64,000 nucleotides of DNA from Thecamonas trahens ATCC 50062 (Eukaryota > Protista > Apusomonadida). The stretch is from contig NW_013657625.1 in NCBI RefSeq assembly GCF_000142905.1, positions 159,690-223,689 of the forward strand, given 5' to 3'. The translations under genes and the position numbers were made by a program. This document shows, piece by piece, positions 15,366 to 22,381 of this stretch. The notes under the pieces are model-generated. The model made no database searches. It saw only the letters and a program-made list of their open reading frames with translations, and was not told the DNA's origin. How positions within the stretch are numbered: position 1 is the stretch's first letter; each line of letters begins with the position of its first letter.

Positions 15366-16589
15366 ATGAAGATCACCCTCCTCGCACTCGTGGCACTCGC
15401 TGCCATCGCCTCTGCCCACTCGGTCCAGCTCGTCAACGAGTTTGAGGCCTGGAAGGCCCAGCACGGCAAGATGTACGCGTCGCTTGACGAACACAACGCC
15501 CGCCTCTCCATCTTTGCCGACAACAAGCTTCGCGCCGCGGCCCTCAACGCGCGCTCCCAGACCGCCACCTTTGGCATGAACGCCTTTGCCGACCTCTCGC
15601 CTGAGGAGTTCAAGGCCTCGGTACGCCCCCCCCCCCCCCCNNNNNNNNNNNNNNNNNNNNNNNNNNNNNNNNNNNNNNNNNNNNNNNNNNNNNNNNNNNN
15701 NNNNNNNNNNNNNNNNNNNNNNNNNNNNNNNNNNNNNNNNCCCCCCCCCCCCCGCACCCTGGGTCTCTCCCTCTTTTCCGCCACTCACACCACCCCCCCC
15801 CTCATTTTGTAGTTCCTCTCGTCGTCGCCGGCCACCCTCCCGTCGGACTACACCCTCGATGCGCCCGCGGGCAACAAGGACATCCCGTCGTCGTACGACT
15901 GGCGGACGCACACGCCGCCTGTGGTCAACCCGGTCAAGAACCAGGGCCAGTGCGGTTCGTGCTGGGCATTCTCTGCGGTTTCGGCCATCGAGTCGGCCTG
16001 GGCCCTCGCCGGCAACCCGCTTGTCTCGCTCTCGGAGCAGAACATCATCGACTGCACCCTCAACAACGAGGCGTACTGCATCAAGTACCACGGCCAGAAG
16101 TCGTGCCCCGCCGGCTGCAACGGCGGCCTCCAGCCGGAGGCCTACCTCTACGTCATGGCCAACCATGGCATCGACACCGAGTCGTCGTACCCGTACCAGG
16201 CCGTTGACGGCACCTGCGAGTTCAAGTCGTCGTCGGTTGGCGCCACTGTCTCCAACTGGACCTTTGTCTCGACCTATGAGGCTCCCAACGAGGAGGCCGT
16301 CGCTGAGGCTCTCGTCGAGCACGGCCCGCTCGCCATCGCCGCTGACGCCTCCGAGTGGCAGCTGTACATGGGCGGCGTGTTTGACCTGCCGTGCGGCCAT
16401 TCGCTCGACCACGGCATTGTCATCGTTGGCTACGGCTCGAAGAAGACCATCCTCGGCAAGGAGCACCCGATCTGGATCATCCGCAACTCGTGGGGTGCCT
16501 CGTGGGGTGAGAAGGGCTACATGTACCTCCAGCGTGGTGACAACAAGTGCGGCGTCGCCGACTACGTCACCCGCCCCATCATCCACTAA
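15366..16589 (+). CDS. Papain-family (C1A) cysteine protease; exons 15366-15620 and 15813-16589
   Basis: Signal peptide, I29 prodomain (FGMNAFADLSPEEF), YDWR, QGQCGSCWAFS (Cys), LDHGIVIVGYG (His), IRNSWG (Asn). Phase-0 intron GTACG...TTGTAG with poly-C and an N-gap. Confidence 0.95.
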
Positions 16590-16712
16590 GCTCCTGCTCA
16601 TCTGCCTCTGGCTTGCTGGTAAATTTTCTTTCATGCCCTTGCCTGGGTATCTCTCTGTCACAAGTAGCCAGCGGAAGGAAAAACGGCGCGGGCCAACTGC
16701 TGGCGCGACGGA

Positions 16713-19700
16713 CTACCACTCGTCGTCGAGGCTTGCCGCAAACGTCGCCATTTGCAGCGCCGTGAGCGCCAGCGATGGGCCTGAGCAGTGATCCGACGTA
16801 GGGTCGCACCGCTCGATCGCCTGGTCCACATCATACACGTTGAGCACGCCGTTGACAATCGGAACGCCAATCTTGGCCTGCAGCGCCACCAGCCCGTCGA
16901 CCACCGCCGACGAGACGTATTCAAAGTGCGCCGTTGCGCCCTTGATGAGAATGCCGACTGCAATGACCACGTCCGGCGCGTACTTGGCTGCCGCCGCCTC
17001 CACTCCATACAGCAGCTCATACGAGCCGGGCACCACCACCTGCTTGATCTGCGCCCCCACATCCACTCCGTACTGCTCGGCCATCACCCGCGCAATCTCG
17101 TCGACAAGCGCGGAAATGACCGGCGCGTGCCACGCCGCACGCACAACGAGGATTCGCGGCCGCGCAGCCACCACAGCCTCGCGCGTCAACTTGGGCAACG
17201 CCACCGCAGAGAGGAGCGACTTGCGGTAGCCGCCGATGCCCTCTTCCGCGCTAGGCGCTCCGCCAGTCGCTTCGTCGCTCGCGCTCGCGCACCCGTTCTC
17301 GCTTCCGGTAGCGTTGTCGTTGGCCGGTCCACTCCCCTTGCCGCTGTCAGCAACTGCTCCGGAGCCGTTGCCACTCCGAACTGCTGCCACGACTTTGGCA
17401 AGCTTGGCATCGTCATGACGCACAGCCTTGGCCGCAAGGTACTCGACGTTGCGCGGCGAGACGCCCGTGACCAGCGCCCGCGACTCGGCAAGGAGCCCGG
17501 CGTCGAGCAGCACCTTTTTCTTGGCGGGATTCGACGAGAGAAGGACAACCGAGTCGACGTTGAGGGCGGCGAGCAGGTTCGGGCACTCGTCAAATGACCG
17601 CGCGTCCTCGGCGTGGCCGACGGCCACGTTGGCCGCGTACGTGTCGAGGCCTGGCGTCTCGCGCATCGCACGGTACGCCTTGACCTTGTCAAACAGCCCG
17701 ATGCCGCGCCCCTCGTGGCCAGCTGGCAGAATGATGACTCCGCGCCCGGCCGCCGACAGCACGTCAAGCGCCCGCTTCAGCTGCGCGCCGCAGTCGCAGT
17801 GCGCCGAGCCGAGCACATCGCCGGTAAAGCACTCCGAGTGGATGCGGACCAGCGTAGGTTTGCGCCCACGCGGCAGCGGCGCGCTTGGATCGTCGCCCTC
17901 CACCCCGCGGACAAGAACTCGCGTGCCGCTCTGATAGACCCGGAGGACCCACGTCCCGTGCGGCGCTGCAAGATCGAGGAAGCACGCCGAGAACTCGCTC
18001 TCGTTGCCGCCACCCTCCTCCCGCTCGGCCACCACTGGCGGCGAGTCGAGCGCAAACGGGAGCGAGTGCGCAAGCATGTACTCGCGAATGTGCGCTACTG
18101 TTGTAAAAGCGAGACCATGCTTGGCTGCCACCGCCGCACACTGCGGCCGCCGCGCCATCCCACCCTGCGGATCGGCCTTGTCCACAATCTCTGAGAGCAG
18201 CGCCACAGGCGCAAGCCCGGCCAGTTGCGCCAGCGTCACCCCGGCCTCGGTGTGTCCGAGCCGGACCCCAAGCCCGCCAGGCCGCGCAATGAGCGGAAAG
18301 ATGTGGCCCGGACGCCGGAGCTCGCTCTTGTTCCCGCAAGCCACCAGTCGCGCCGTCCGCGCCCGCTCGCTTGCCGGAGCGCCGGTTGTTGCGTCCCACG
18401 CATCGACCGTGATGGTGAACGCCGTCCCATGCGGATCCGACGCCGATGACGGCGGCACCATCAACGGCAGCTCGAGCTCGGCCGCCCGCGAAGCAGACAT
18501 CGGCGTGCACAAAATGCCAGTGGTGTGCTCCAGGAAAAGCACCACAGCCTCGGGTGTCGCTTTTTCCGCAGCCACAATGAGGTCGCCTTCGTTCTCGCGA
18601 TCGGTGTCGTCCATGACCACCACCACCTCGCCGGCACGAAACCGCTCAATGACCTCGCCCACGGGCGTGAACGGCAGCTCGTCGTCATCCTCCGCAACAG
18701 CACTTGCCTCGAGCCCGGCACTGGTCGGCGCGTTGGGCTTGAAAACGCTCTCCCTCGCCCACTTCTCAAACACGTTCGACTCATCGAGCACCGCGGTCTC
18801 GGCCAGCTGCAACCGTGGCGCGTCGGCCATCGACCCACCAGCACCGACACTACCGCTAGTGCCCGCCCATGGCTTGCCGCCAGCCAGCACCGTGTTGCCG
18901 CGGTAGACGTGGATCTCGTCAAAGATGCCCGACGCCACAAACTGCGCATGGAGCGTCGCACCACCCTCGATCATGATTTGGAGCAGGCCGGCGCGACCAA
19001 GCCATGCGAGGACTGCGCCGAGATCGACGCCGACACCGTTTCCGCTCCGCGGGACAACCACCGCACGCACACCGTCGACCGAGTCCGAGACCAGGCCAGC
19101 TGCAACCGCTGCAGCCACCTTGTCGCTGGAAGCAGTAAAGACAACCGTCGGCGCGAGGCTCGTCTCAAAGACATGCAGCTCGCTGCCGGCCATCGCCGCA
19201 TCAAGCACCCGTCCGCGGCCATCAAGCACTACACGCAACGGCTGCCGGGCGCTCGATGGATACAGCGGATTGAGGTGCCGCCCGAGAGCGGACGCCTTGG
19301 GGTAGCTCCGCACCGTCAGCCGCGGGTTGTCCGCTAGCACGGTGCTCGAGCCGACCACCACAGCCTGCGACGCGGCCCGGAGGCCGTGCGCATGGTGCCG
19401 CGCTGCCTCGGAAGTAATCCACTGCGACGAGCCGTCGGCGGCGGCAATGCATCCATCAATCGAGACGGCCGTCTTGAGCACCGCATACGGCCGCCCACTC
19501 CGCCGATGATGCAAGTACGCTGCAAGCGAAGCCTCGACTAGCTCCGCACCGACACCCGTCACCACCTCGATGCCAACGTCAAGCAGCACCTGCCGCCCTT
19601 GCCCATCCGTCTGGCCATCCGGATCAACCACCCCGATAACAACCCGCGCCACCCGCGCCGCTATCAGCAGCGCGTCGCACGGCGGCGTCCGTCCGTGGTT

Positions 19701-20884
19701 GTGGCACGGCTCAAGTGTGGTGTACACCGTGGCGCCGACAAGCTCGTTCGCTCGGCCTTCGCGCCGGGCACGCTCGATCGCATCCCGCTCAGCATGCGCA
19801 AGACCAGCAGCCTTGTGCACGCCCTCGGCAACCACCGTCACTCCATCGCTGGCAACAATGACGCATCCAACATGCGGGTTCGAAGCGGCAGTAAACTTGG
19901 CAGTCTCGCCAACGGCCACAGCTCGCGCCATAAAGAACGCGTCGCGTGCAGCAACATCGCTCGGAATCGCACCCAGTCGCGCCACGTCGGCGGCAGTCGC
20001 ACCCGTATCCTCAGGCTGCCAGTGGCGCGAGACCGCATCGGCTTCGATGTTGAGCAGCGCGCCACGGCGGCGGGTCGTCTCGCCGAGCGTCGTCGCCTCG
20101 AGCGTCGCCGGAATGAGCGAGACTCGGAAAAAGTCTCGGCAGCCGCCAGGATCTCCTCAGCGGCGGGACAGGTGCCCGGAGCGACACCAGCAGCCGACGT
20201 TGGCGGCTTGGCGGCGACTTCGGCAACCGTAAGCGAGACACCGTCCAGAGTCACCGAGCCCTTGTACACGATCGACGATGCGGTGGGCAGCATGCGCGGA
20301 ACCGCGAGCCACACATTGCGCGAGCCGTCGCCTGGCTCCTCCACAGCGGCCACAGCCACCATGCCATGAACGTGCCCCGAGACAACGTGCCCTCCAAGCT
20401 CGGCGCCATGACGCAGAGCACGCTCAATGTTGACGCCGACAACATCAGACGCCGCATCGGCCGTCGGCTTCCAGCCAGCAAGCGCACCAAAGGTGGTGAT
20501 CGCCCGCGACTCGGCCATAACAAAGAAGGTGACGACGACGGGCGCCGGCCCGCAGCTCGCCGGGAGCTTGTCGGCCACCGAGCCCGGAAGCTCACTCGCC
20601 GGAGTCGCCAGAGGCAACGACGTCGCAGTAAGACAGACCCCGTTGACCGCAACCGAGTCGCCAAGCTGAATGCCGTCCCAGAACCCGCCATCGCCGTCCC
20701 CAACTGCGGGACACGGCGACGTGGCGGAAGCAGGCGGGCGCGAGCGGGCCGACAGGCCGTCAGCCGCCACCACAGAAAGGACCCATCCACCAGTTGTTCC
20801 CTGTGCCCACGACGGACCAGTTCCCGCAGACGCTTCCGTAAACCATCCGTAGCCCTTGGATCGGATAATGCCTGTAAACACCAT
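16713..20884 (-). CDS. ribE-ribD-ribBA-ribH: Multifunctional riboflavin biosynthesis fusion: riboflavin synthase - RibD (deaminase/reductase) - RibB - RibA - lumazine synthase, ~1390 aa with one -1 frame break at ~20128-20157
   Basis: Riboflavin synthase: VFTGII, GDSVAVNGVCLT, GGHVVSGHV, KGSVTLDGVSLT, then in the -1 frame FRVSLIPATLEATTLG...LNIEAD. This runs without a stop into RibD (HAE, LEPCHNHGRTPPC, SQWITS, IEGG), RibB (DDTDRENEGD, RRPGH, GHTE), RibA (RIHSECFTGDVLGSAHCDC, EGRGIG) and RibH (VPGSYEL, IKGATAHFEY). Confidence 0.88.
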
Positions 20885-22381
20885 AGCTGTGGCTCTGGCG
20901 AGGCGTGTCGCGTCTTGCCGCTCACACCCTCGCGCAACGCTCCACCGCCCAAATAGCCCAATGTCATCCATCCAGAACCCTGTGTTGCGTCAGCCGATTT
21001 GGCGAACACAGGTGCGTCAATGCCGCGCAAGCCGCCACAGCTACATGGCGTCATCCACCAGAGAATGACCCACTATTCACAAGTGCAGCACGAAGCGTTG
21101 TGAGGGGTGGCGGATCGCATACCAGCATGCCTGCATGCGTGATTGGCCACGCAAACGTGCCGCAGTGTGCTCGCATGTCGCCGCGTCCGTGCACGGGACC
21201 AAAGCTTCCCCAACCGTCTCAATCTTTAAACTTTGCATCACTGGTGTATCACACAGCATGTGTAGCAAGCATGGGCTGCTGCTTTCTTCGTACGCCACCC
21301 CAACTCTTCCTTTCTTGGCTTACCAGCTATTGTGAGCTTAACCATAGATAACGAAAGACGGGACGAAAAGACATTGATCTTAAATGGCCGACTGTTTTCT
21401 GGACACTTCTGCGGAGTTGAGCGCTGGGACTCATCCCATATGTTGGGGATCGCGGCAGTGTTGCAATAGGCTTACATGTGCTGCGAATTGCGCTCCGGAG
21501 TTGCAGCCCGTGAGGTCCAACGCTGTCGCAGCAAATCAATCGTGATGGCAGCTGTGGTGGGTTGTGGGACCAGCGCAAAACTCAGACGCGGCGATGGAAG
21601 AGCTGTGCACTACCGCAAGCAGTTCGACGACCGATCCTCCGCTGAAGCCGGTTGCCATCGAGGCGGCGCTGGTGGCGCGATGCCGGGCCGGGCGGACTGA
21701 CGTCGCAGCCCATGCTACACGACACCATAACGTGCGTGTGTTCCATCGAGGACGTTTTACTCCATCTCCAGCGACTCGCTCTCTTCGGCGTATGTGGATA
21801 CGTGGCGCGAAGGCTGTACGCTGGCTACAGACGCGTTTGATGTCGACGGGACGGGATGACTCGAGTGGCGGCGGGCGAGTCTGTGGCCACTACATCGCAG
21901 GCCGATGGCGCAGCTCGCTGTCATCATTAGCGTTCATCGGCCGCTGCGCGAGCGCTGCCAGCGCCTACGGCGGCATCGCTACCCGGCAATCACCCTTAAG
22001 CTCGAGACACGCCGGCTGGCGCGGTCATGGCACTCTCTCGAACCGGAACCAGCTCGCCATGCCTCCTCGATAATGCCGCTGCTCTAACTGCGGCAAGTAG
22101 CGGTGATCGCACCTGGGCATCCTCCAATGCTCAAAACTCGACCTTGTTGATGACCTGGTGTCCATCCACGAGATGCCGGTCCAGCAACGAATGAATGATG
22201 GCCATGTGGGAGAGGCAGGAGGCTTTTTTTTTGACCGATTGTGGCACTGAAACGTTTTTGGCCGGCCGAGTTGGTGCCACGACCGGTTTACGCTGTGGAC
22301 ATGGAACAGATTTGTCCAACTTGCCAGCAGGGATACAGATAGCAGAGGAAGAGGCAGCACTCGGCGCAAGGAAGGGTGTCC

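What the first reader, a model, noticed from the sequence alone, without database searches (positions are those of the whole stretch)
16713..20884. Single-polypeptide riboflavin megasynthase: RibE-RibD-RibB-RibA-RibH in one eukaryotic gene
Seen in sequence: the 1090-aa ORF already fuses RibD (~19930-18760), RibB (~18680-18080), RibA (~17960-17430) and lumazine synthase (~17160-16740). The upstream riboflavin synthase ORF loses homology after KGSVTLDGVSLTV. Its missing C-terminal motifs (FRVSLIPATLEATTLG...LNIEAD) lie in the -1 frame and run with no stop into RibD. So the locus is one ~1390-aa protein with six catalytic activities. Catalytic motifs look intact (HAE/PCxxxxxxxxC deaminase Zn site, C-x10-C-x-C in RibA, DRENEGD and GHTE in RibB, HFEY in RibH). 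Established knowledge: these are all committed steps from GTP and ribulose-5-phosphate to riboflavin, except the generic phosphatase; RibD and RibBA bifunctional fusions are common and fungi use separate RIB genes. I am not aware of a characterised whole-pathway fusion. Inference: an operon-like cluster collapsed into one eukaryotic cistron, possibly allowing substrate channelling; a potential single-gene riboflavin cassette.
Basis: partly seen in the sequence, partly recalled or inferred. Interest (0 to 1): 0.92.

Follow-up and report, generated by a model that had tools for sequence, protein, structure and literature searches.

The report
One-gene riboflavin pathway fusion protein
A marine protist carries all five known enzymes (six activities) of vitamin B2 synthesis in one 1,390-residue protein, and the same undescribed fusion also occurs in other protists and in giant viruses, so it is real but not unique.

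Summary
On the minus strand, 20884-16713, lie two riboflavin-synthase barrels (RibE), RibD deaminase and reductase, RibB, RibA and lumazine synthase (RibH), with no stop codon between them. The only break is a one-base frame change inside the second RibE barrel.

The break is almost certainly an assembly error. A read-derived contig of the same organism has T6, not T5, at 20128-20132, which closes the frame to give one 1,390-aa, 143-kDa ORF. No splice joint was seen. A relative at 61% identity has one unbroken 1,375-aa ORF with the same domain order.

This gene is the genome's only copy of RibE, RibB, RibA and RibH, and its codon composition matches its neighbours. The catalytic motifs are invariant across 26 homologues. 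The fold model shows compact domains joined by three disordered linkers.

The architecture is not unique. At least 27 protein clusters share the same six-domain order. Some lie on giant-virus contigs, one beside an NCLDV capsid gene, and others on eukaryotic contigs. The 80 best bacterial loci keep the genes separate, in the order ribD-ribE-ribBA-ribH.

I found only partial fusions in the literature (Orpheovirus). Enzyme activity, assembly and channelling are untested.

The parts
16713..20884 (-). Whole coding sequence of the fusion. ATG is at 20884-20882 and the stop at 16715-16713. It gives 1390 aa (143 kDa) once one base is added in the T run at 20128-20132.
   Evidence: A read-derived contig set of run X1 covers 16605-20907 colinearly, leaving four gaps of 0-56 bases between contigs.
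20414..20884 (-). RibE N-terminal lumazine-binding barrel. It starts with MVFTGII and has NGVCLT at residues 81-86. Low-complexity loop inserts are present.
   Evidence: Pfam Lum_binding. Alignments to E. coli and Brucella riboflavin synthase. Family alignment. Metatranscriptome contig X6 covers 20459-20751 colinearly.
20037..20413 (-). RibE C-terminal lumazine-binding barrel (VNIERAL...DGVSLTV / FFRVSLIP...LNIEAD). It includes a loop insert of about 27 aa at 20212-20135.
   Evidence: L003 carries an in-frame loop of similar length at the same place.
20128..20132 (-). T5 homopolymer (A5 on the + strand) where the assembly is one base short. This is the site of the apparent frameshift.
   Evidence: read-laying table 4: in X1 an 'A' is put in behind 20127, contig 19297-20463, depth 15.9. 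With it the frame reads ...AAAETFFRVSLIP.
19632..19943 (-). RibD deaminase domain, with the HAE and PCx8C zinc site.
   Evidence: Pfam PF00383, E 3e-17. E. coli RibD 2G6V, E 9e-60. H64, A65, E66, C94 and C103 are invariant.
18777..19490 (-). RibD reductase domain (RibD_C).
   Evidence: Pfam PF01872, E 4e-41. Alignment to 2G6V and 2B3Z.
18681..18746 (-). Disordered linker between RibD and RibB (ORF residues 414-435).
   Evidence: AlphaFold2 model, pLDDT below 50.
18078..18656 (-). [quoted passage not shown]
   Evidence: Pfam PF00926, E 3e-65. M. tuberculosis RibBA 4I14, E 3e-75. RENEGD and GHTE are invariant.
18003..18041 (-). Disordered linker between RibB and RibA (ORF residues 649-661).
   Evidence: AlphaFold2 model, pLDDT below 50.
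17493..17972 (-). RibA domain, GTP cyclohydrolase II, with three zinc cysteines (ORF C719, C730, C732).
   Evidence: Pfam PF00925, E 2.5e-36. Matches to 4I14 and 2BZ0. Invariant columns.
17202..17366 (-). Disordered low-complexity linker of 55 residues between RibA and RibH (ORF residues 874-928).
   Evidence: AlphaFold2 model, pLDDT 30-41. The linker is absent or shorter in L003 and in viral homologues.
16740..17156 (-). RibH domain, 6,7-dimethyl-8-ribityllumazine synthase.
   Evidence: Pfam PF00885, E 3e-29. The best solved relatives are S. pombe lumazine synthase chains (best 3.5e-25; 1KYV 1.8e-24). W952 and H1020 are invariant.

Best explanation
The locus is a single intron-less nuclear gene of a GC-rich marine protist. 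It encodes a 1390-aa 'beads-on-a-string' enzyme with domains in the order riboflavin synthase (RibE), pyrimidine deaminase and reductase (RibD), DHBP synthase (RibB), GTP cyclohydrolase II (RibA) and lumazine synthase (RibH).

Shown here:
- The domains, their order and the open frame between them.
- The apparent frameshift is a one-base shortfall in a T5 run of the assembly.
- This gene is the genome's only copy of four of the five enzymes.
- The catalytic motifs are conserved across the family.
- The same architecture occurs in other eukaryotes and in giant viruses, but not in the 80 best bacterial loci.
- The model gives four well-folded modules joined by three disordered linkers.

Inferred pathway:
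- RibA opens GTP.
- RibD deaminates and reduces the product.
- A separate, unidentified phosphatase removes the phosphate.
- RibB makes the four-carbon unit from ribulose 5-phosphate.
- RibH condenses the two to give dimethylribityllumazine.
- RibE dismutates two lumazines to riboflavin plus one pyrimidine, which returns to RibH.

Inferred consequences of fusion:
- It fixes a 1:1 stoichiometry of the enzymes and keeps RibH next to RibE.
- It makes the whole pathway transferable as one gene.
- RibE probably sits first because riboflavin synthase needs its free MFTG N-terminus. This last point rests on my recollection of E. coli mutagenesis, not on a test here.

The family probably arose by stepwise fusion, RibBA to RibBA-RibH and RibE-RibD, then joined, and has moved between giant viruses and protists.
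For: Domains and order.

Frames.

Reads: the X1 contig 19297-20463 has one extra A behind 20127, there are no joints in any of 4 runs, and contigs run colinearly over 16605-20907. X1 depth falls from 62 to 4 from the 3' to the 5' end of the gene, as in cDNA. Metatranscriptome contigs X6 and X11 at 99% identity or more cover parts of all domains.

Corrected ORF: 1390 aa with a single terminal stop.

L003: one 1375-aa ORF, 61% identical, with the first Met after an upstream stop at MVFTGII.

Sole copy. RibD_C has only one other, weak, paralogue.

Family: 27 representative proteins have the full order and 20 of them start M(V)F(T/G)G.

Viral context: NCLDV capsid gene on L005; TopoII, ankyrin, DHFR-TS and GMC genes on L004; IMG/VR contigs L007 and L012.

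Eukaryotic context: L039 and EukProt P0029.

Bacteria: genes are separate and none of the 80 loci has RibE first.

Trees: 99 of the 101 rows in one well-supported RibBA clade are non-bacterial, and 40 of 42 rows beginning RibE-RibD (full or near-full fusions) fall in one subclade.

Catalytic residues.

Fold: pLDDT 82, pTM 0.46, linkers at ORF residues 414-435, 649-661 and 874-928.

Native composition: GC3 0.76 against 0.75-0.82 in neighbouring ORFs.
Against: - Only one run (X1) covers the frameshift site. The tool labels it 'DNA?', so it may be the data the assembly came from rather than independent support.
- The independent metagenome (X3) and the metatranscriptomes have no contig over 20099-20437.
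- Contigs cannot prove a single transcript or show its ends.
- No protein-level evidence exists.
- The long disordered linkers could be cleaved after translation.
- The family lacks the C-terminal trimerisation helix of canonical riboflavin synthase, so how the RibE active site forms between subunits is unknown.
- The direction of virus-host transfer is unresolved, because the deep branches form a polytomy.
Confidence: 0.85

Rival explanations
1. The fusion gene is translated as one chain, but the disordered linkers are cut. The cell then holds separate or partly separate enzymes, a polyprotein rather than a megasynthase.
For: There are three linkers with pLDDT below 50. One is a 55-residue Gly/Ser/Ala-rich stretch that is not conserved in L003.
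Against: In most homologues the RibE-to-RibD spacer leaves only about 4-15 residues beyond the RibD N-terminal helix, little room for a processing site. The fixed domain order across 27 clusters suggests selection on the linked state. No protease site is known.
Confidence: 0.12
2. The frameshift is real in the genome. RibE is truncated (a pseudogene or a separate short product), and only RibD-RibB-RibA-RibH (1072-1090 aa) is made, as the public gene model implies.
For: The assembly itself reads T5. The ESM Atlas record of this protein starts at residue 19 of the 1090-aa ORF.
Against: The X1 contig has T6. The shifted-frame segment still encodes conserved barrel residues and aligns to E. coli RibE residues 157-187. 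It has no stop for 57 codons before the ORF's first start codon (GTG at 19985). This is the only Lum_binding gene in the genome. L003 has no break.
Confidence: 0.04
3. The frame change is bridged by recoding, either programmed ribosomal frameshifting or transcriptional slippage on the T run.
For: The break sits exactly in a homopolymer. If X1 is cDNA, an extra base in RNA but not in DNA would look the same.
Against: A run of five T is short for slippage. The relative L003 and all 27 homologues are in frame with no such site. A homopolymer miscount is a more ordinary explanation for a draft scaffold with N gaps.
Confidence: 0.03
4. A micro-intron of 17-53 nt between 20187 and 20135 restores the frame.
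For: Eight GT/GC...AG pairs of suitable length exist in the interval.
Against: No joint was seen in any run. The X1 contig is colinear through the interval. L003 keeps an in-frame coding loop of similar length at the same position.
Confidence: 0.01
5. The gene is part of recently integrated giant-virus DNA rather than a resident host gene.
For: Homologues with the same architecture lie on giant-virus contigs.
Against: The whole genome has no NCLDV capsid match, although that search had no positive control. GC and GC3 equal those of neighbouring ORFs. The neighbours are a cathepsin-L gene and a large secreted or adhesion-type protein. It is the only copy of the pathway. It sits on its own long branch with L003.
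Confidence: 0.04

Closest known systems
Bacillus subtilis-type rib operon (ribDG-ribE-ribAB-ribH) and its 'heavy riboflavin synthase' complex
   Same: It has the same five enzyme families. The bifunctional units RibD (deaminase then reductase) and RibBA (DHBP synthase then GTP cyclohydrolase II) are in the same internal order. Physical association of RibH with RibE is already the rule in Bacillus (PMC8414670 and PMC9048828, abstracts).
   Different: In bacteria the genes are separate cistrons in the order D-E-BA-H and the complex is non-covalent. Here all are one chain with RibE first. No FMN riboswitch precedes the gene. RibE lacks the C-terminal trimerisation helix.
Orpheovirus ORPV_666 (RibB+RibA+RibH) and ORPV_596 (DHFR/deaminase/RibD), with homologues in Indivirus ILV1 and Acanthamoeba (PMC5786535)
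   Same: These are multi-domain riboflavin proteins outside bacteria. RibB-RibA-RibH forms fall in the same RibBA clade as the full fusions, next to them. The 1.47-Mb viral genome L008 carries a 572-aa RibB-RibA-RibH gene.
   Different: These are two separate proteins, and no riboflavin synthase domain is reported in them. The window protein joins everything, including RibE, in one chain.
Uncharacterised six-domain proteins on giant-virus and protist contigs (e.g. L007 1105 aa, P0004 1122 aa, P0025 1098 aa, P0029 1125 aa)
   Same: They have the identical domain order, an MFTG start, conserved catalytic columns and 33-42% identity to the window protein.
   Different: They are shorter (median 1098 aa) because linkers and loops are short, and many are AT-rich. 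The window protein and L003 form their own long branch, with low-complexity inserts in RibE and a 55-residue RibA-RibH linker.
Other eukaryotic rib fusions: plant RIBA (RibB-RibA); Stenamoeba RibE-RibD; Diaphanoeca and Helgoeca RibB-RibD; Craspedida UC1 RibD-RibB-RibA
   Same: They show that rib enzymes fuse readily in eukaryotes. The RibD domains are 42-50% identical to the window's (plant RIBA from PMC3509567).
   Different: Each joins only two or three activities, in varied orders. None carries the whole pathway.
Classical pathway megasynthases (fungal pentafunctional AROM, animal CAD)
   Same: The concept is the same: consecutive enzymes of one pathway on one polypeptide. This is established knowledge and was not tested here.
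   Different: The enzyme families are unrelated. Here the chain includes the terminal enzyme and a by-product recycling pair (RibH and RibE), and the gene is also carried by viruses.

Membership tests
Riboflavin synthase (RibE/RibC, trimeric bacterial-eukaryotic type) | Two tandem lumazine-binding barrels | tested here: met
   Pfam Lum_binding matches in two stretches. The two frame pieces align to E. coli 1I8D residues 81-153 and 157-187.
Riboflavin synthase (RibE/RibC, trimeric bacterial-eukaryotic type) | MFTG motif at the very N-terminus, and the conserved Cys of NGxCLT | tested here: met
   The protein starts MVFTGII, and NGVCLT lies at residues 81-86. 20 of 27 homologues start M(V)F(T/G)G.
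Riboflavin synthase (RibE/RibC, trimeric bacterial-eukaryotic type) | C-terminal helix that holds the trimer together (E. coli residues ~187-213; from recollection of the structure papers) | tested here: not met
   Homology ends at E. coli residue 187. In most family members only 26-40 residues separate the NxE motif from the deaminase NPWVG motif, about 24 of them belonging to the RibD N-terminal helix, which leaves no room for the trimerisation helix.
Bifunctional RibD | Zinc deaminase motifs HAE and PCx8C, followed by a RibD_C reductase domain | tested here: met
   PF00383 and PF01872. Alignment to 2G6V, E 9e-60. H64, A65, E66, C94 and C103 are invariant.
Bifunctional RibBA | DHBP synthase (RENEGD, GHTE) followed by GTP cyclohydrolase II (three zinc Cys, EGRGIG) | tested here: met
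   PF00926 and PF00925. 4I14, E 3e-75, aligned across both halves. Invariant columns.
Lumazine synthase (RibH) | DMRL_synthase fold with the conserved His of the HFEY motif | tested here: met
   PF00885, E 3e-29. H1020 and W952 are invariant. 44 solved relatives.
Lumazine synthase (RibH) | Capsid-forming (60-mer) versus pentameric subtype | tested here: inconclusive
   The six best solved matches are S. pombe lumazine synthase chains, five per entry (best 3.5e-25; 1KYV 1.8e-24). An icosahedral Salmonella enzyme scores 2.4e-19. The loop after AIER reads CDPTSDHCSG, not the GTKAGN-type motif I recall for capsid formers. No assembly test was run.
Whole-pathway fusion family RibE-RibD-RibB-RibA-RibH | All six domains in this order on one uninterrupted ORF | tested here: met
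   The order is met. The ORF is uninterrupted only after adding the base seen in the X1 contig. Relatives L003, L007 and P0002-P0008 are uninterrupted.
Bacterial rib operon | Separate cistrons in the order ribD-ribE-ribBA-ribH, often behind an FMN riboswitch | tested here: not met
   There are no stops between the domains and RibE is first. No Rfam match lies upstream. The flanks are eukaryotic.
Giant endogenous viral element | Viral hallmark genes nearby, or composition unlike the host | tested here: not met
   No Capsid_NCLDV match in the 28.7-Mb genome, though that search had no positive control. GC3 is 0.76 against 0.75-0.82 in neighbouring ORFs.

The most novel reading that the evidence does not exclude
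The fusion is a self-assembling riboflavin 'factory'. RibH forms pentamers, RibD and RibBA form dimers, and RibE pairs barrels between chains. Together these could tie many chains into a closed high-symmetry particle; a 60-mer would satisfy 5-, 3- and 2-fold contacts at once. Such a particle would channel the labile intermediates and recycle the pyrimidine by-product. Because the whole pathway is one gene, it would also act as a mobile vitamin B2 cassette. It has passed repeatedly between giant viruses and protists, and viruses would use it to raise host flavin supply, for example for the FAD-dependent GMC oxidoreductases encoded next to it on three virus-like contigs.
Probability: 0.12. Interest if true: 0.88.

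Novelty: new variant of a known kind. Interest (0 to 1): 0.62.

Why it matters
All the enzymes are textbook. Linking every known committed enzyme of vitamin B2 synthesis in one polypeptide has not been described in any paper I could find. The nearest report is two trifunctional proteins in Orpheovirus.

The finding matters in four ways:
- It corrects a split public gene model.
- It gives a natural single-gene riboflavin cassette, which could be tested by complementing five E. coli rib mutants.
- It raises a structural question: how domains that normally form trimers, dimers and pentamers coexist on one chain, especially as RibE has lost its trimerisation helix.
- It shows that giant viruses carry a complete cofactor pathway in one gene and share it with protists. 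That makes virus-driven flavin metabolism and virus-host gene exchange directly testable.

Tried and rejected
- Micro-intron: I enumerated GT/GC...AG pairs that would restore the frame. I rejected this because contigs are colinear and L003 keeps the loop in frame.
- ESM Atlas search gave no usable neighbours.
- Six literature searches for a described whole-pathway fusion and a look through a 2026 riboflavin review found only the Orpheovirus partial fusions. The search for 'MFTG' found nothing, so the N-terminus argument rests on my memory.
- FMN riboswitch or other Rfam family upstream: none.
- NCLDV capsid in the host genome: none, but the search had no positive control.
- Pfam on neighbours of the viral loci L007, L009 and L012 gave mostly no hits, so adjacency to GMC oxidoreductase is not general.
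- Direction of virus-host transfer: the full-length tree is a basal polytomy, so I make no call.
- Organism identity: names are coded or withheld and I did not pursue them.
- The independent DNA metagenome X3 and the metatranscriptomes X6 and X11 do not cover 20099-20437. The frameshift fix therefore rests on one run.
- The frame-joined protein was built only inside my own scripts. All search tools received the two frame pieces separately, by reference.


Full report
**Observation**

The 1090-aa ORF 16713-19985 matches five Pfam families, with E-values from 3e-17 to 3e-65: dCMP_cyt_deam_1, RibD_C, DHBP_synthase, GTP_cyclohydro2 and DMRL_synthase. They lie at window 19632-19943, 18777-19490, 18078-18656, 17493-17972 and 16740-17156.

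Upstream, an ORF in another frame contains Lum_binding. Its sequence from ATG 20884 starts MVFTGII, the hallmark N-terminus of riboflavin synthase. After ...DGVSLTVAEV the homology leaves this frame. The rest of the second barrel (FFRVSLIPATLEATTLG...LNIEAD) lies in the frame that opens after a TGA at 20159-20157 and runs without a stop into the 1090-aa ORF.

The two pieces align to E. coli riboflavin synthase residues 81-153 and 157-187. They are therefore the two halves of one domain, and the frame change must lie within 20157-20128.

**The frame break**

I laid contigs of four public runs on 16600-21100. No run shows a splice joint.

Run X1 is from the same organism (2011). Its contig covers 19297-20463 and differs from the window by one silent substitution (20186) and one inserted A behind 20127. 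On the coding strand that is T6 instead of T5 in ...GAGACTTTTTCCGAG.... With that base the sequence reads ...AAAETFFRVSLIP... and the locus becomes one ORF of 1390 aa, 142.9 kDa, with a single terminal stop.

X1 depth falls from 62 at the 3' end to about 4 at the 5' end of the gene, and its contigs stop at 20907 and 16605. This looks like oligo-dT cDNA of a single message, although the tool labels the run 'DNA?' and contigs cannot prove one transcript. Two metatranscriptomes (X6, X11) and an estuary metagenome (X3) hold contigs at 99% identity or more over much of the gene, but none covers 20099-20437. The fix therefore rests on one run.

Independent support comes from a metagenome contig of a related species (L003, GC 64%). 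It encodes one uninterrupted 1375-aa ORF, 61% identical, with the same order. It starts at MVFTGIIRSKG just after an upstream stop, and it has an in-frame loop of similar length at the place where the window changes frame. I rejected the micro-intron candidates I had enumerated on these grounds.

**What the protein is**

Each domain aligns to solved enzymes:
- RibD to E. coli 2G6V (9e-60).
- RibB-RibA to M. tuberculosis RibBA 4I14 (3e-75).
- RibH best to S. pombe lumazine synthase chains (best 3.5e-25; 1KYV 1.8e-24).
- RibE to Brucella and E. coli riboflavin synthases.

In an alignment of 26 family members the following columns are invariant:
- Deaminase HAE and the two zinc cysteines.
- RibB RENEGD and GHTE.
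- The three RibA zinc cysteines, plus further invariant columns at about the spacing I recall for the E. coli catalytic Tyr and Arg.
- The RibH Trp and His.

An AlphaFold2 model of the 1090-aa part has mean pLDDT 82 but pTM 0.46. The domains are compact and are joined by disordered linkers at ORF residues 414-435, 649-661 and 874-928.

The gene is the genome's only match to Lum_binding, DHBP_synthase, GTP_cyclohydro2 and DMRL_synthase. RibD_C has one other, weak, stand-alone paralogue. The organism's de novo riboflavin synthesis therefore depends on this locus.

GC3 (0.76) equals that of neighbouring ORFs (0.75-0.82). The flanking genes are a cathepsin-L-type protease and a large secreted protein. 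There is no riboswitch upstream and no NCLDV capsid match in the genome. It is a resident nuclear gene.

**Not a one-off**

A search of 1.84 billion representative proteins, together with the word-indexed search, found 27 distinct proteins of 983-1346 aa with the same six domains in the same order. Twenty of them begin M(V)F(T/G)G.

Some are viral:
- The P0025 contig carries an NCLDV major capsid gene and a capping methyltransferase.
- The P0004 contig carries topoisomerase II, ankyrin genes, DHFR-TS and a GMC oxidoreductase in dense intron-less array.
- IMG/VR giant-virus contigs L007 (151 kb) and L012 carry the full fusion.
- L009 (362 kb) carries it as two divergent genes, RibE-RibD and RibB-RibA-RibH.
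- The 1.47-Mb genome L008 carries RibB-RibA-RibH.

Others are cellular. P0029 is in EukProt and lies among tRNA-modification, LSM, kinase and DnaJ genes.

Named eukaryotes carry smaller fusions in various orders:
- Stenamoeba: RibE-RibD.
- Diaphanoeca and Helgoeca: RibB-RibD.
- Craspedida UC1: RibD-RibB-RibA.
- Florenciella: RibA-RibB.

In the 80 best bacterial loci all genes are separate. Where RibE was detected on the stretch it lies between ribD and ribBA, giving ribD-ribE-ribBA-ribH, and in most other loci the gap there fits it.

**Evolution**

On a RibBA-region tree the fused forms fall in one well-supported clade (SH-aLRT 99). It holds 101 rows, only two of them bacterial. RibB-RibA-RibH forms branch in several groups beside a subclade holding 40 of the 42 rows beginning RibE-RibD, i.e. 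full or near-full fusions. Together with the two-gene viral arrangement, this favours stepwise fusion over collapse of an operon in one step.

On a full-length tree the window and L003 form their own long branch in an unresolved base. The EukProt protein nests with a virus-like one. Viruses and eukaryotes are thus interleaved, and I cannot give the direction of transfer.

**Mechanism**

The enzymology is inferred, not shown. The chain should carry out every committed step from GTP and ribulose 5-phosphate to riboflavin, except the dephosphorylation. It keeps lumazine synthase and riboflavin synthase together, as in the non-covalent Bacillus complex (PMC8414670 and PMC9048828), so the pyrimidine released by RibE can re-enter RibH.

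Placing RibE first, unlike the operon order, fits the need for a free MFTG N-terminus. This is my recollection of E. coli mutagenesis, and no paper was retrieved for it.

A real puzzle remains. The family lacks the C-terminal helix that trimerises canonical riboflavin synthase, while its other domains normally form dimers and pentamers. The oligomeric state, any channelling and possible linker cleavage are all open.

**Known or new**

The only related report I found is Orpheovirus, with ORPV_596 (DHFR/deaminase/RibD) and ORPV_666 (RibB+RibA+RibH) and homologues in Indivirus and Acanthamoeba (PMC5786535). Six searches and a 2026 review gave no description of the full fusion. The scan's own index holds first-reader notes on this same stretch but nothing on other DNA.

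I file the finding as a new variant of a known kind. The enzymes are known and the fusion principle is known. The whole-pathway architecture exists unannotated in databases, and its presence in giant viruses is the unexpected part.

The public gene model appears to start at residue 19 of the 1090-aa ORF, so it omits RibE.

The frame-joined protein was used only in my own scripts, and all search tools received the pieces by reference.

Noticed in passing
L004:13589-17110; L006:1406-3265; L040:8189-9922 and L040:6569-6988: A GMC-type (FAD-dependent) oxidoreductase gene lies directly beside the rib fusion gene on three virus-like contigs. One of these contigs also has a flavokinase gene 3 kb away. 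This may link viral riboflavin synthesis to viral flavoproteins. The adjacency is absent from L007, L009 and L012.
   Followed up: partly
L041:3757-4269: A HAD_SAK_2 phosphatase gene follows the fusion gene on the P0020 contig (NCBI GCA_004196315.1). It is a candidate for the one pathway step the fusion lacks.
   Followed up: no
L122:605-1651 (G000:C23:297004-298050): The genome's only other RibD_C match is a stand-alone 348-aa ORF with a weak hit (29.5 bits). It is probably a divergent reductase paralogue.
   Followed up: partly
L009:9986-11746(+) and L009:11811-13502(-): A 362-kb giant-virus contig carries the pathway as two divergent neighbouring genes, RibB-RibA-RibH (587 aa) and RibE-RibD (564 aa). 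This is a plausible intermediate on the way to the full fusion.
   Followed up: partly
P0037, P0171, P0172, P0009, P0175 (EukProt proteins): Riboflavin enzymes are fused in many different combinations in eukaryotes: choanoflagellates have RibB-RibD and RibD-RibB-RibA, Stenamoeba has RibE-RibD, and Florenciella has RibA-RibB.
   Followed up: partly
L059 and L068 (Nanopelagicaceae / Actinomycetota RibBA): These are the only two bacterial rows that fall inside the clade of fused eukaryotic and viral RibBA sequences. They could be a donor lineage, a recipient, or an artefact.
   Followed up: no
window 20186: The X1 contig reads C where the assembly has A on the + strand. This is a silent Gly codon change 59 bases from the homopolymer error, so the assembly may be of low quality locally.
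   Followed up: no
window 15366-16589 (+), N run 15641-15740: A cathepsin-L-type protease gene (I29 propeptide plus Peptidase_C1) converges on the rib gene and is split by a 100-N scaffold gap. The 3' ends of the two genes lie about 16 bases apart (16589 versus the X1 contig end at 16605).
   Followed up: partly
window 19932-19985: The ESM Atlas holds this protein only from residue 19 of the 1090-aa ORF. The public gene model therefore seems to start at an internal Met and to omit the riboflavin synthase part.
   Followed up: no
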